A DNA stretch of 64,000 bases from Leidyana gryllorum EB-2025a. Lineage: Eukaryota; Protista; Apicomplexa. The notes under the pieces were generated by a model. It saw nothing but the letters and a program-made list of their open reading frames with translations, had not been told where the DNA came from and made no database searches. Every line of letters begins with the position of its first letter. Position 1 is the stretch's first letter. Made by a program: the position numbers and the translations under genes. Positions 16,750 through 21,460 of this stretch are shown piece after piece. The stretch is from NCBI GenBank assembly GCA_048772705.1, contig JBLWGC010000042.1, positions 11,515 through 75,514 of the forward strand, given 5' to 3'.

Positions 16750-19077
16750 TTAAGCGTACATCTCAGTGAGCTCTCTGCTGAACCGCTGTTTAGCAACATG
16801 TCTTCGCAGCTTCAGAGTGGGAGTCAGCAGCTCGTTCTCGACTGAGAAGGGGTCCGAGATCATGACAAACTTCTTCACTTTCTCGAAGCCTTTGAGTCCT
16901 ACCTCACTGGCTGATTCTTCCATGGCCACACGGACAGCCTCGTTGAACTCAGAGTCTTGACAGAGCTCAGCCAGCGAGCTGAATGGCCGGTCAGCCGAGT
17001 TTGCCCACCGTGCCGCCATTTCTTCATCTGGTACCACAATGCCCACCAGGAAGGGCTTAGTTGACTCGCCGTGGACAAATATTTGACCCACTAGCGGAGT
17101 TCGTGTGTAGACAGCTTCCACCCGCTCTGGTGCCACATACTCTCCTTGACTGAGTTTAAAGATGTTCTTTCGGCGATCAATGATTTTGATGCAGTTGCCG
17201 GGCAGGAGTACAGCGACGTCGCCGCTGTTCAACCAGCCGGTCTCGTCGATAGCTTCTTTCGTGGCTTCGGGATTCATCAGATATCCCGGAGTGACCGAGT
17301 ACCCACGTACCAACAACTCACCACACACTTCGTCACCATCCACACTGTAATTCATCTCCGGTATCGATCTTAGACAGAATTCTGAGAGAAGGGTGTAGGA
17401 GACACAGACTCGGAGGCACACCACTCACCCAAACAAGGTTGTACTCCGCCAATGTGACCGGCTACGCGTTCCCCGGGATTACAAATAAATGATGCGCCCA
17501 TTTCCGTCATGCCAAAACCCTGCGAGGAAGCGACTGCCGGCGGTTTCGGCTGTAGAAACTTACGTGCATGAGGGGGCAGCAGAACAGCACAGACATCCTT
17601 TCTTGAACGATTGGTTCCAGGGGAGCCCCTCCAACTAACATGTACTTGACATTTCCCCCCATCAATTTGCGGGTTTTACTGAAGACAAGGGGATCCCATA
17701 TGGGATGAGTATAAATCCCCTTCTCTCGCAGGTTTTTGAGCTTTGCGTTCATTGCAGAGTTGAAGAGAAATTGCGCGACCGGGGCCTTGTCCTGGATCCC
17801 AGCCATAACTTTATCATTGATACGACTATACAATCGCGGCACCGACAAGAAGACTGTTGGTCGGATCACTTTCATGTCGTCCAATAGCTTTTGTGTATCT
17901 CCAGAATAACAGGCAATCTTCACACCCTATGTTTGCACGCGATTTGATTTGCCGTCTCCAGCTGGGTGTGTAAGTGAGTGAGTGCTTACCAGAGCGATAC
18001 AATTGGAGCAGATTAACCTCTCAAAAACGTGCGCTAACGGCAGATAGGATATATGCAAATCCGTCTGAGTGAAAAGTTAGTCGCTCAATGGACCGAATAG
18101 TCGCGCCGCCTCCTCACCTCTCCGGCTCGGAAACCAGGATGATTCATAATGCAACGCTGGTGTGCTGCAACTATTGCAGCAAAGTTTCGAGCTGTAGTGA
18201 TAACTCCTTTAGGGAGTCCAGTAGTACCAGATGTGTAACACAGAGTACCAACGTCTTCCGCGGTTTGAGGAGTGAGGACTATGTCGGTATTTTGACGGCC
18301 CTCGTTGACGAGCTCTTTCCAGAAGATGAGATCGATACCCGCAGACTTTGCTAATTCCTTTATCTCGTCGGCCGGACGGTCGAACAACAGCAGATGAGTC
18401 AACGCGGGCTTGTAGTCGTTGTCAAAGTGCCCTTCCTTGAGACGCACCAGAAGCTTGCAGATGATCATGGCCGACTCTACCGACGCCGCAATAGCTGACA
18501 TCTGCGTCTGTTCCAAAATTGAGAGCATCGCCTCATCCCCCAGCGAATCGTACATAGGAACCAAAGTGACACTGTCGGCGCAGGTGGCCTGCTCCGTGAT
18601 GAACCACTCATGACGATTCTTGCTGATCACCCCCAAAAATCTCATACGACGACCGGGCGCGTATGCCTCGTCGGGATACTCAGTGGCCTTTAAGAAGCCA
18701 CGGTGCCGAATACCTCGAGCAAGAGAAACCGCCAGCTCCTCAATCTCACCGTAGGTCGCCCATCGACACTGTCCAGGCGGGCCTATCTCGGTCTCTTGCT
18801 TTTCCGGGTTCCAAAGGCGGGAACCCAAGAAGGTGGCGTCACGAGCACCCGGTTGGGCTAAACGGTATTGGAAGATATCCCAGCTATCAATAAAAGCTCT
18901 TTCACCATGCAATACGACCAGCCACACTCACGGCGAATCCCATTTTACCCCTGGCAAGGTATACACCAAGCCCGAAGGAAAGACGGCTGACTTGAACACA
19001 GGTGTTGCGTCCGGGTACGGAGGAGGGTCGGTTGGCACTGCATAGGTGATGTAATCAGCTGACAAACCGTTTCCCAT
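16750..19077 (-). CDS. Long-chain fatty acyl-CoA synthetase, predicted N-myristoylated (MGNGLS)
   Basis: YTSGTTGLPKG, YLPLAHVFE, GWLNSGD and IIDRRKNIFKLSQGEYVAPE motifs; several short introns. Confidence 0.95.
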
Positions 19078-19098
19078 GCTTTCAGAGCTAAATTCTTT

Positions 19099-21460
19099 TT
19101 ATCCACCAAAACACACCTGGGCTTGAAGCCCAGCACAGCCAATCTCCCCTCCCCTCCTGACACCTTCCTGTAGCTGCACAGTCTCTGTGCCCCCACTTCC
19201 ACGTGCACTCCAGTTCACTCGTTGTCTGAGTGTGAAGGGTATCTTATCAAAAATGCACTCAGCACCAGCTCACCTCTTCGTCATGAGAGAGCTCGCCAAA
19301 TCCAGAAAGGCTTGATCCACGTTTTCGGCAGTCTGATTTCACCCTCAAACAAAAGGCTCCGGTCACAGGCGTGTCTCACCTTGGCCGATGTGGCGGTGAA
19401 AGCTCCACCCAATTTACTCGCCAACTTCATCGCTTCTTCATTAGTCACGGCCGACACTCCCAAATCGCTCTTATTTCCGAGCAGCACCAAACCGTGTGTC
19501 TTCATATTGAAATCATGGTGACCTTTGATCTGATGCCACCAAATGTTTGCGGGGAGAGAGAGAGACTTCCACTACTCACCGTCTCCACCCAATCCAAAAC
19601 GTGGTCAAAAGAACTTCTTCGACTTTGATCAAAGACGATCACGAACCCATCGGCGTCTCGAAAGTAGTTTCCGCTCAGACCCGCGAACCGTTCCTGACCC
19701 GCTGTATCCCACTGTAGGAATGAAATTCAGAGATACTGTGTAGAGAAGAGGAAGAATTCCCGGCATCACTCACCAGCTGCAGCGTACAAAGTTTGCCCCC
19801 GACAAGCGTCACCAGTGTACTGCAATCGGTGCCAATCGTGGCTGTGTGCATGTCATGGTATGTGTCGGTGACAAATCTCAGCAGCAAACAGGATTTCCCA
19901 ACCGCTGTATCGCCAACCATAATGATCTTGAACTTGTGCTGGCTACTTTGCGGCTCGCTGGTGGATAAGATCGATCATGTCATTCCCCAAACCTTCCCCG
20001 CCTACCCTCGCAGTTCAAGCACCGTACAGCACAACAGCTTCCGAGTGAGTTTCGCTTCCTGATCCAACAGCAACCGATGGATCTTGTCGGTCTTTGTCGC
20101 CAGATCCTCCAGTGTCGCCTGAGTCACTTTGCCCCGTCCATCAGACAGCCGGTTGCCACCCCAAACCAGCAATTTGTCCATGAGCTGCGTGGCCGCGTGC
20201 CCCTTGAATCCCAGTATTCCATCACTCAGCGGTCTACACCACTTCTCCTTGCTCAAATCGAATACATATGTACTGACATTGTGATCACAGCTCTGCCCGC
20301 CGTACACGAACAGCCATCTCGGACGCATCATAATCGTGGAATGAAAGATGCGAGATGAGGGTGGGCAAGATCGTGATCCCACGCGACGCCATTGACCCTC
20401 AATTTCGTCCTCAGATACGACAACGCTCAACTTGTATATGGAGCACTCTTCCTCCAAGTTGCCTCTGTCAGGATTGGGTCACACGCAACTGAACGAACTT
20501 CTGACTTTGCATCTCGCACTTACCCTATCAAATAAGCCGCCTCGTCGTGGGAGCTCCATGTGAGGGTGTGCCCTACGCTGCAACCCGCATTCGAAACACT
20601 ATACCAATTTCTCCGTCTCACCGCTTCCCAGGCTTCTGCCCAACCTGCTTGACCTCCACCCACTCCTTGGACTCAACTTTCAAACAGTACAAACTTGTGA
20701 GAATCTACAGTCCAATATTGCACGAGAGGGACTTGGAACCCTCTCACCTCTTCACCATTCGACCCTCCGTGTATCAGCAGCAGATCCTCTTTGTCCGCGC
20801 CCCCCGGACCCGCCGGAACTAAACAGTCAGCGTGAAACATTCTGGGAGGTGGCGAGGCTCCTTCGTACTGTAACTCTTCCCAAGACGAATTCTCCACCTG
20901 AACAGTGCTTCAAAACTGAGGCGATCTCAGACTGATCCCTCTTACATCCATCACATAACTGGAATTCGACAACTGATAGCCTTCAGACGGAGGGGGACCT
21001 TGGAGGCCGATCATCGTCGTGCCGCCGCTAGGCACCGCATCGGTTCCAGGAAGTGGTTGTGCCCCTCCGACCACAATCAGTTGGTCTCCAACCCGAGTGA
21101 GAGAGTGTCCGAAGATGGGACTCAGAGCATTCCTCCCAAGCGGTGCTTTCTTCTCGGTCCATTGGGTACGCTCTGATCCCGAGTGGAGGGCCAAGTTAAA
21201 CCGCAACGCAGCAGCTCTCACCGATTTCCAACAAGTGGATGCCGCCGTAAGTATTTGTATCCGTAAATCCGCCAGCTAACATACATTTCGGGCCCATCAT
21301 GACCATCTGGACCGTCACATCGTACAGACTGACAAATCGTTAGCTTCTTTACCTTCCCTCCCACTCGGGGCGCGGGGAGATCCCCCATTTGCTTCAACTC
21401 GCACACTGATAAGACCAAGTTACGGGCCTCTAACACATCATCGCTCTTAGCGGAAGTCAT
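19099..21460 (-). CDS. Kelch-repeat (six blades) + Rab GTPase fusion protein
   Basis: Six kelch GG repeats are joined by in-phase intron 19958-20005 to KFKIIMVGDTAVGKS..WDTAGQERF..GNKSD..TSAK; about 11 introns; ends QVCFGG. Confidence 0.75.

What the first reader, a model, noticed from the sequence alone, without database searches (positions are those of the whole stretch)
19099..21460. Hidden kelch beta-propeller-Rab GTPase fusion gene
Seen: manual splicing gives six kelch blades (PAPRVG..LAGG; IFGHS..VVGG; PPRMFH..IHGG; KRVGHT..LIGG; SRIFHS..VYGG; FKGHA..VWGG). The kelch ORF's apparent TAG lies inside a 48-nt GT..AG intron (19958-20005), the typical size here. Removing it joins ..ELRG in frame to EPQSSQHKFKIIMVGDTAVGKS. 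The Rab part has no in-frame ATG of its own before strand beta-1; the nearby upstream ATGs hit stops. G1, G3, G4 and G5 are intact, but the effector motif IGVDF is IGTDC and the tail (GCAGLQAQVCFGG) is not a canonical CC/CXC. Known: Rabs are normally stand-alone ~200-aa proteins, and kelch proteins such as RABEPK/p40 are separate Rab effectors. Inference: a 'large Rab' carrying its own propeller scaffold, possibly an undescribed trafficking module.
Basis: partly seen in the sequence, partly recalled or inferred. Interest (0 to 1): 0.8.

Follow-up and report, generated by a model that had tools for sequence, protein, structure and literature searches.

The report
Kelch propeller fused to Rab GTPase
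The window holds one 12-exon gene for a 605-residue protein that joins a six-bladed kelch propeller to a Rab-type GTPase; the fusion is real, but the same architecture is already in public databases for gregarines, coccidia such as Toxoplasma, Perkinsus and dinoflagellates, so this is a new member of an existing, functionally unstudied family.

Summary
On the minus strand, 21460..19099, twelve exons separated by eleven GT..AG introns of 43-62 nt give one open frame of 605 codons. The kelch ORF's TAG (20004-20002) lies in a 48-nt intron (20005-19958). Removing that intron joins ..ELRG to EPQSSQHKFKIIMVGDTAVGKS.

No RNA run was listed for this genome, so the splice is not shown directly. Relatives support it: full-length proteins of 550-900 residues with the same kelch + Ras architecture occur in gregarines, Rhytidocystis, Cardiosporidium, coccidia (Toxoplasma, Neospora, Eimeria, Cyclospora), Perkinsus and dinoflagellates. 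Many come from transcriptome assemblies. All eleven junctions, including the kelch/Rab one, align without gaps to them.

The GTPase is closest to Rab1, and its G1, G3, G4 and G5 motifs are intact. The tail ends CFGG. Many relatives carry CC or CXC near the end.

An AlphaFold model of the closest relative (Blabericola, 49% identical) gives a propeller closest to the LZTR1 kelch domain, followed after about 10 residues by the Rab fold.

Databases name these proteins only generically ('Ras family protein', 'hypothetical'). No paper describing the fusion was found.

Verdict: real gene, new member of a known but uncharacterised myzozoan family. Moderate interest.

The parts
19099..21460 (-). Whole coding region of the kelch-Rab gene, ATG 21460-21458 to TAA 19101-19099; 12 exons, 605 aa
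   Evidence: one open frame after removing 11 GT..AG introns; collinear with transcript-derived orthologs at every junction.
20006..21460 (-). Exons 1-7 with introns 1-6: N-terminal strand plus six kelch blades, a short helical insert and the last propeller strand (aa 1-389)
   Evidence: Pfam kelch hits on exons 3, 4 and 7. Orthologs score PF24681 at 1e-45 to 1e-96. AF2 model of ortholog P0001. Foldseek top hits are the LZTR1 kelch domain, TM 0.82-0.84 by target.
20008..20052 (-). Conserved segment KLTRKLLCCTVLELR (aa 374-388), just before the splice. In the ortholog model it is a long beta-strand (353-366 of P0001), probably part of blade 6 together with the N-terminal strand.
   Evidence: Alignment; secondary structure. 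Its assignment to blade 6 is inferred from strand order, not from coordinates.
19958..20005 (-). Intron 7, 48 nt, GTAGGC..CACCAG, phase 2. It contains the apparent stop TAG (20004-20002) and a second in-frame stop.
   Evidence: Gap-free alignment across the junction with Blabericola, Gregarina sp., Ancora and Noctiluca proteins.
19099..19957 (-). Exons 8-12 with introns 8-11: Rab-type GTPase domain and C-terminal tail (aa 389-605)
   Evidence: Ras PF00071 on exons 8, 9 and 10. The closest solved structures are Rab1A/1B.
19891..19914 (-). G1 / P-loop GDTAVGKS (aa 404-411)
19694..19708 (-). G3 DTAGQ with the catalytic Gln (aa 452-456)
   Evidence: invariant in 38 family members
19464..19475 (-). 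G4 NKSD (aa 513-516)
19380..19388 (-). G5 SAK (aa 542-544)
19111..19113 (-). Cys602, fourth residue from the end (CFGG); candidate prenylation site
   Evidence: The column is invariant Cys in alignment A2. Prenylation itself was not tested.
19075..19077 (-). ATG of the next gene on the same strand (acyl-CoA synthetase, MGNGLS..), 21 nt after the TAA of the kelch-Rab gene

Best explanation
This is a single gene for a 605-aa kelch-Rab protein. It is the ortholog, in what is most likely a gregarine, of a family conserved across Myzozoa (apicomplexans, perkinsids, dinoflagellates). Shown: the 12-exon frame, the domain content, and collinearity with full-length relatives. Also shown: intact GTP-binding and hydrolysis motifs, Rab1 as the nearest Rab type, and a propeller of the LZTR1/KLHDC2 kind in the ortholog model. 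Inferred mechanism: the C-terminal Rab domain is an active GTP/GDP switch anchored to a membrane through C-terminal cysteine prenylation. The propeller is tied to it by a spacer of only about 10 residues, because the last propeller strand lies directly before Rab strand beta-1. The propeller would be a built-in protein-binding platform. The Rab cycle (GEF, GAP, GDI-type extraction) would then decide where and when that platform is on the membrane, so switch and effector-like scaffold sit in one chain. Whether the propeller also contacts its own Rab domain is open.
For: The frame and splice sites are shown, and Pfam on exons. Exon 7 hits P0001 (583 aa) at residues 221-368, leaving a 215-aa C-terminal part. 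Ten of ten relatives checked have kelch followed by Ras. Their sources are Blabericola, Ancora, Polyplicarium, Porospora, Cardiosporidium, Toxoplasma, Perkinsus, Noctiluca, MMETSP and TSA transcripts. The junction and all other exon boundaries align gap-free. The window groups with Blabericola and Gregarina sp. at SH-aLRT 100, and dinoflagellates, coccidia and the two Cardiosporidium copies each form a well-supported clade of their own. WDTAGQERF, GK, NKxD and SA are invariant in 38 members. Rab1 tops the PDB lists and the non-kelch hits. The AF2 model has pLDDT 82.6 and pTM 0.81, with strand 353-366 followed by Rab beta-1 at 376. The LZTR1 kelch domain is the top structural match. Many relatives carry CC or CXC near the end.
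Against: There is no RNA evidence from this organism: none was listed. The donor of intron 7 (GTAGGC) is the least canonical of the eleven. The genome packs genes very tightly, with 21 nt to the next ATG, so a short spacer could in principle be intergenic. RabF motifs are eroded in this lineage (IGTDC, RFAGLS), and the tail lacks CC/CXC. Coccidian members show no cysteine in their last 14 residues, so membrane anchoring by prenylation may not hold for the whole family. No experiment on any member was found.
Confidence: 0.85

Rival explanations
1. These are two adjacent genes in a hyper-compact genome. A kelch-only gene ends at TAG 20002, and a separate Rab gene starts at ATG 19920 (Met402).
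For: A stop codon sits exactly at the donor. No RNA data are available.
Against: A Rab starting at Met402 would lack most of strand beta-1, and the Ras profile and Rab1 structures already align 3-7 residues upstream of that Met. The 48-nt stretch has GT..AG ends and the modal intron size. Every relative carries the two domains in one chain, several from transcript assemblies, and the window's sequence is gap-free across the junction.
Confidence: 0.04
2. Both forms are made. The spliced mRNA gives kelch-Rab, while retention of intron 7 gives a kelch-only protein ending ..ELRG, because the stop overlaps the weak donor.
For: The donor GTAGGC departs from the GTRAGN of most of the other introns. 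Retention gives an immediate stop after a complete propeller. Rhytidocystis has transcript isoforms of 363, 458 and 658 aa in one cluster.
Against: There are no RNA data. Isoforms in a transcriptome assembly can be fragments. Nothing shows that a kelch-only form is made or used.
Confidence: 0.1
3. The Rab part is a degenerate pseudo-GTPase that serves only as a structural appendage of the propeller.
For: The switch-I-adjacent motif is IGTDC instead of IGVDF, and other RabF motifs are eroded. The clade has a long branch in the family tree.
Against: G1, the switch-I Thr, G3 with Gln, G4 and G5 are all intact in the window and invariant across 38 members. This points to selection for nucleotide binding and hydrolysis.
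Confidence: 0.05

Closest known systems
Deposited kelch+Ras proteins of Myzozoa, for example Toxoplasma gondii XP_002367251.1 'Ras family protein' (771 aa), Perkinsus marinus XP_002787766.1 (585 aa), Porospora cf. gigantea XP_067807735.1 (561 aa), Cardiosporidium cionae KAF8821028.1 (566 aa) and Noctiluca A0A7S1B080
   Same: Same order of domains, a similar length in most, a conserved N-terminal strand, a conserved pre-Rab strand (KKLFFLNVLEIK type) and an invariant GTPase core. The window aligns end to end, at 49% identity to Blabericola and 35-38% to the others.
   Different: The window, Blabericola and Gregarina sp. form a fast-evolving branch with IGTDC/VGADC in place of IGVDF and a C..C-x-x-G tail in place of CC/CXC. 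Coccidian members are longer and show no cysteine in their last 14 residues.
Rab1 / Ypt1
   Same: It is the best-scoring solved structure and the best non-kelch database hit for the GTPase part, with the same G motifs.
   Different: Rab1 is a stand-alone protein of about 200 aa. The margin over Rab2, Sec4 and Rab8 is small (141 against 140, 137 and 131 bits), so descent from Rab1 is not established.
Large Rab GTPases (Rab44, Rab45/RASEF, CRACR2A)
   Same: A C-terminal Rab domain preceded by a large N-terminal non-GTPase part. The RASEF Rab domain is among the PDB hits.
   Different: Their N-terminal part is an EF-hand plus coiled coil, not a propeller. They are animal proteins. No EF-hand family was found here.
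LZTR1 kelch domain bound to RIT1, MRAS or KRAS (PDB 9mey, 9mez, 9mf0)
   Same: It is the best structural match of the propeller (E 1e-23, TM 0.82-0.84 by target). It is a kelch propeller that binds a Ras-superfamily GTPase.
   Different: LZTR1 binds its GTPase in trans and has BTB-BACK domains for cullin-3. No BTB or BACK domain is present here, and sequence identity is only 17-18%. KLHDC2, KLHDC3 and KLHDC10 score nearly as well.
RABEPK / p40 (Rab9 effector with kelch motifs)
   Different: It is a separate polypeptide. It did not appear among the structural or sequence hits here.

Membership tests
Rab family of small GTPases | Ras-like G domain with G1, G3, G4 and G5 motifs and the switch-I Thr | tested here: met
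   GDTAVGKS, TIGTD, DTAGQ, NKSD and SAK are present. Ras PF00071 is above its cut-off on exons 8, 9 and 10.
Rab family of small GTPases | Closer to Rabs than to Ras, Rho, Arf or Ran | tested here: met
   57 of the 60 listed PDB hits of exon 8 are Rab, Ypt or Sec4 by name, 2 more carry other titles (GH01619p, which titles Drosophila Rab2; the 'RAS and EF-hand domain containing' protein RASEF) and 1 is a plant RABA1a; Rab1A/1B come first. The result is the same for the ortholog's whole domain. No tree with outgroups was built.
Rab family of small GTPases | Five RabF motifs (IGVDF, KLQIW, RFRSIT, YYRGA, LVYDIT; Pereira-Leal and Seabra, from my own knowledge) | tested here: inconclusive
   The window has IGTDC, TLQLW, RFAGLS, YFRDA and IVFDQS. 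The family consensus has IGVDF, KLQLW, RFSVVT, YYRNA and FVYDAT. The motifs are recognisable in the family but eroded in this lineage.
Rab family of small GTPases | C-terminal cysteine(s) for geranylgeranylation | tested here: inconclusive
   The window has Cys at -4 and -12 (..GCAGLQAQVCFGG). Many relatives carry CC or CXC at or within about 12 residues of the end; coccidia have none in the last 14 residues. Modification was not tested.
Kelch beta-propeller | Repeated kelch motifs (GG doublet, aromatic, Trp) recognised by kelch profiles | tested here: met
   Six repeats can be read in exons 1-7. Kelch_3 scores 26.8 bits against a cut-off of 22 on exon 7. Orthologs score PF24681 at up to 1.6e-96.
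Kelch beta-propeller | Closed six-bladed fold | tested here: met
   The AF2 model of the 49%-identical ortholog has pLDDT mostly above 85 over residues 11-330, in six groups of four strands. Foldseek TM is 0.82-0.84 to the LZTR1 kelch domain. The window's own protein was not folded, because the spliced model has no reference.
Myzozoan kelch-Rab fusion family (unnamed) | Kelch propeller, then a conserved strand, then a Rab domain in one chain, collinear over the full length | tested here: met
   The window sits inside the family tree with Blabericola and Gregarina sp. at support 100.
LZTR1 | BTB and BACK domains after the kelch domain | tested here: not met
   No BTB or BACK family appeared in the Pfam scans of the exons or of ten orthologs. 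The similarity is in the propeller fold only.
Large Rab GTPases (Rab44/45/CRACR2A) | [quoted passage not shown] | tested here: not met
   No EF-hand family appeared; the N-terminal part is kelch.

The most novel reading that the evidence does not exclude
The kelch-Rab family is an unstudied, myzozoan-wide Rab paralogue in which an LZTR1-like propeller reads or gates the nucleotide state of its own Rab domain in cis. It would be a self-contained switch-plus-effector used in trafficking specific to this group, for example at the pellicle or the apical or secretory organelles. It would be testable in Toxoplasma.
Probability: 0.15. Interest if true: 0.6.

Novelty: new member of a known kind. Interest (0 to 1): 0.4.

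Why it matters
The finding corrects what a naive ORF reading would split into a kelch gene and a headless Rab. It also places this genome's gene in a family that spans gregarines, coccidia (including Toxoplasma, Neospora, Eimeria and Cyclospora), Perkinsus and dinoflagellates. That family keeps an intact GTPase core and a rigidly attached propeller. I could find no study of it, although Rab inventories of Toxoplasma exist. A conserved Rab with its own binding platform is a reasonable candidate for lineage-specific trafficking, and the Toxoplasma ortholog offers a tractable system to test it.

Tried and rejected

Complex prediction: kelch part against Rab part of P0001 gave no verdict (score 0.01). 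This is neither support nor evidence against.

Paralog search: searching this genome with exon 7 found only the gene itself and one weak kelch hit. Other Rab genes exist elsewhere in the genome.

Literature: nine searches were sent, one returned only an argument error, and the eight that ran found no paper on a kelch-Rab fusion. The single 'kelch' in PMC10470541 is a Kelch13 reference.

Kremer et al. 2013 (PMC3591302) left three putative Toxoplasma Rab-like genes unstudied: Rab23, an '8/10 like' gene and a 'Rab-like' gene. I could not map the Toxoplasma kelch-Rab accession to any of them. NCLIV_029730 in their tables is Rab4, a false lead.

A Phytophthora 'RABB1c' of 872 aa with kelch, SWIB and Ras covers only 35% of the query. 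I did not count it as a member.

The joined 605-aa model was not sent to any search or folding tool. Searches were done exon by exon by reference. The joined translation was built only inside local scripts, for the frame check, alignments and the tree.

The careful tree search did not finish, so the tree cited is the quick one.

Full report
**1. What is in the sequence**

The feature lies on the minus strand. From ATG 21460, twelve exons separated by eleven introns join to 1818 nt. That is 605 codons with one stop, the terminal TAA at 19101-19099.
- The exons are 21460-21353, 21306-21222, 21172-20946, 20897-20748, 20704-20622, 20577-20524, 20464-20006, 19957-19774, 19711-19580, 19529-19380, 19332-19274 and 19225-19099.
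- All introns start GT and end AG. They measure 46, 49, 48, 43, 44, 59, 48, 62, 50, 47 and 48 nt.
- An in-frame TAG lies 27 nt upstream of the ATG, so 21460 is the first possible start.

- The TAG that closes the 151-aa kelch ORF (20004-20002) overlaps the GT of intron 7 (20005-19958).
- Read through, the frame gives two stops, and the next in-frame Met is Met402 in KIIMVGD, inside strand beta-1.

**2. Domain content, exon by exon**

- Pfam gives kelch families on exons 3, 4 and 7.
- Pfam gives Ras (PF00071) above its cut-off on exons 8, 9 and 10, covering profile positions 1-52, 53-95 and 103-144.
- The Ras profile starts at residue 10 of exon 8, three residues before Met402.
- Rab1 structures align from residues 6-7 of exon 8. 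A Rab starting at Met402 would therefore be truncated.

**3. Is the fusion real?**

No RNA run was listed for this DNA. The splice is therefore not shown directly in this organism. The evidence is comparative, and it is strong.

Exon 7 alone, scored against 1.8 billion representatives, has as best hit a 583-aa protein, P0001 (E 1.4e-37, 46% identity). It matches residues 221-368 and leaves about 215 residues downstream. Ten relatives of 427-595 aa were scanned, and all show a kelch propeller followed by a Ras domain.

Their sources are:
- gregarines: Blabericola migrator, Gregarina sp., Lankesteria, Ancora sagittata, Polyplicarium and Porospora cf. gigantea A and B;
- Rhytidocystis, and Cardiosporidium cionae with two copies;
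- coccidia: Toxoplasma, Hammondia, Neospora, Besnoitia, Eimeria, Cyclospora and Cystoisospora;
- Perkinsus marinus;
- dinoflagellates: Noctiluca, Ansanella and several MMETSP transcripts.

From their identifiers, many are ORFs of transcript assemblies (GenBank TSA prefixes GHVO, GHVR, GHVQ and GFBE; MMETSP; Trinity). I read the identifiers this way from my own knowledge.

In a local alignment, the window's protein is collinear with these proteins at all eleven exon junctions. The kelch/Rab junction is gap-free: KLLCCTVLELRGEPQSSQHKFKII against KLIYCTVLELKGPSQNSQMKFKIV in Blabericola.

I put the two-gene reading at about 4%. The genome does pack genes tightly: the next ATG on this strand (19077) comes 21 nt after this gene's TAA. 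That is why the rival had to be considered.

**4. Which organism and which family**

The genome is 15.5 Mb in 237 contigs.
- The window's protein is 49% identical to the Blabericola protein and 52% identical to the Gregarina sp. protein. It is 35-38% identical to the others.
- In a quick maximum-likelihood tree it groups with those two at SH-aLRT 100, on a long stem.
- Dinoflagellates, coccidia and the two Cardiosporidium copies each form a well-supported clade. The deeper forks are weakly supported.

The tree is compatible with vertical descent from an early myzozoan. The careful search did not finish, and long branches make the deeper nodes unsafe.

No Plasmodium, piroplasm, Cryptosporidium, chrompodellid or ciliate member appeared in the profile search. 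That search is word-seeded and length-limited, so this is 'not found', not 'absent'.

**5. The GTPase**
- G1, the switch-I Thr, G3 with the catalytic Gln, G4 and G5 are intact.
- The core (GK, T, WDTAGQERF, NKxD, SA) is invariant in 38 family members. This argues for a working switch.
- The nearest solved structures are Rab1B and Rab1A, but Rab2, Sec4 and Rab8 are close behind at 141, 140, 137 and 131 bits.
- After the kelch-bearing relatives, the best database hits are Rab1/Ypt1 proteins. 'Rab1-like' is the best label; true descent from Rab1 needs a proper tree.
- IGTDC in the window and VGADC in Blabericola replace the IGVDF that the rest of the family keeps. This erosion is lineage-specific.

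**6. The tail**

The window ends ..GCAGLQAQVCFGG, Blabericola ends ..CPSLRCSNG and Gregarina sp. ends ..CPGLRCANG. All three have a Cys at -4. Many other members carry CC or CXC at or within about 12 residues of the end. The coccidian proteins show no cysteine in the last 14 residues. Rab-type prenylation is therefore likely ancestral and plausible here, but it is not shown.

**7. Structure**

The spliced model has no reference, so I folded the closest relative, P0001, with a 38-sequence alignment. The model has mean pLDDT 82.6 and pTM 0.81.
- The strand pattern fits six four-stranded blades.
- After two short helices (335-349), a long strand (353-366, the conserved KLTRKLIYCTVLEL segment) is followed within about 10 residues by Rab strand beta-1 (376-384).
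- Together with the conserved N-terminal strand (12-19), this long strand most likely completes blade 6.
- The short spacer and the high pTM for a two-domain chain suggest a fixed mutual orientation. This is a weak inference.

By Foldseek, the propeller is closest to the LZTR1 kelch domain in its complexes with RIT1, MRAS and KRAS (E about 1e-23, TM 0.82-0.84 by target). KLHDC10, FBXO42, KLHDC3 and KLHDC2 follow, and the Rab part matches Rab1 and Rab2 at TM 0.90-0.92. The LZTR1 match is a lead that such a propeller can hold a Ras-type GTPase. Sequence identity is only 17-18%, and no BTB-BACK part exists here.

**8. How it most likely works**

Shown: one chain carries a propeller and an apparently competent Rab switch.

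Inferred:
- The Rab domain cycles between GTP and GDP and is membrane-anchored through its C-terminal cysteine(s).
- The propeller is a protein-binding platform whose presence on a membrane follows the Rab cycle.
- Contact in cis between the propeller and the switch regions is possible but untested.

**9. Comparison and novelty**

The gene is not a member of the large-Rab group of animals, because it has no EF-hand or coiled coil. It is not an LZTR1 ortholog or a RABEPK ortholog either. It is a member of an unnamed family that public databases already hold under generic names.

Eight literature searches that ran, and a reading of the Toxoplasma Rab screen (PMC3591302), found no description of it.

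It is therefore a new member of a known kind. The family as a whole remains uncharacterised, which gives the finding moderate interest.

The scan had noted this same stretch before, in an overlapping window (s1-580532).

Noticed in passing
window 19075-19101, minus strand: Only 21 nt separate the TAA of the kelch-Rab gene from the ATG of the next gene on the same strand (acyl-CoA synthetase, starting MGNGLS, a myristoylation-type start). The 5' end of the downstream mRNA must therefore overlap the upstream gene, or the two genes are co-transcribed.
   Followed up: partly
window 20002-20006, minus strand: The donor of intron 7 reads GG|GTAGGC, so a stop codon overlaps the splice site. Retaining the intron would give a complete kelch-only protein ending ..ELRG. 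It is the least canonical of the eleven donors.
   Followed up: no
P0001, P0191 and the window's aa 430-434: The window, Blabericola and Gregarina sp. share a changed switch-I-adjacent motif (IGTDC / VGADC) and a C..C-x-x-G tail. They sit on a long common branch. The rest of the family keeps IGVDF, and many members carry CC or CXC near the end.
   Followed up: partly
P0163 and P0016 (Cardiosporidium cionae): Cardiosporidium has two kelch-Rab copies (655 and 566 aa) that are sisters in the tree, which points to a recent duplication.
   Followed up: no
P0128, P0182, P0183, P0185, P0188 (coccidia): Coccidian members are longer (728-900 aa) and show no cysteine in their last 14 residues. They may attach to membranes differently, or not at all.
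   Followed up: no
G000 contigs C140, C182, C211, C230: Other Rab-like exons lie elsewhere in the 15.5-Mb genome. None is next to a kelch match, so the kelch-Rab gene appears to be single-copy.
   Followed up: partly
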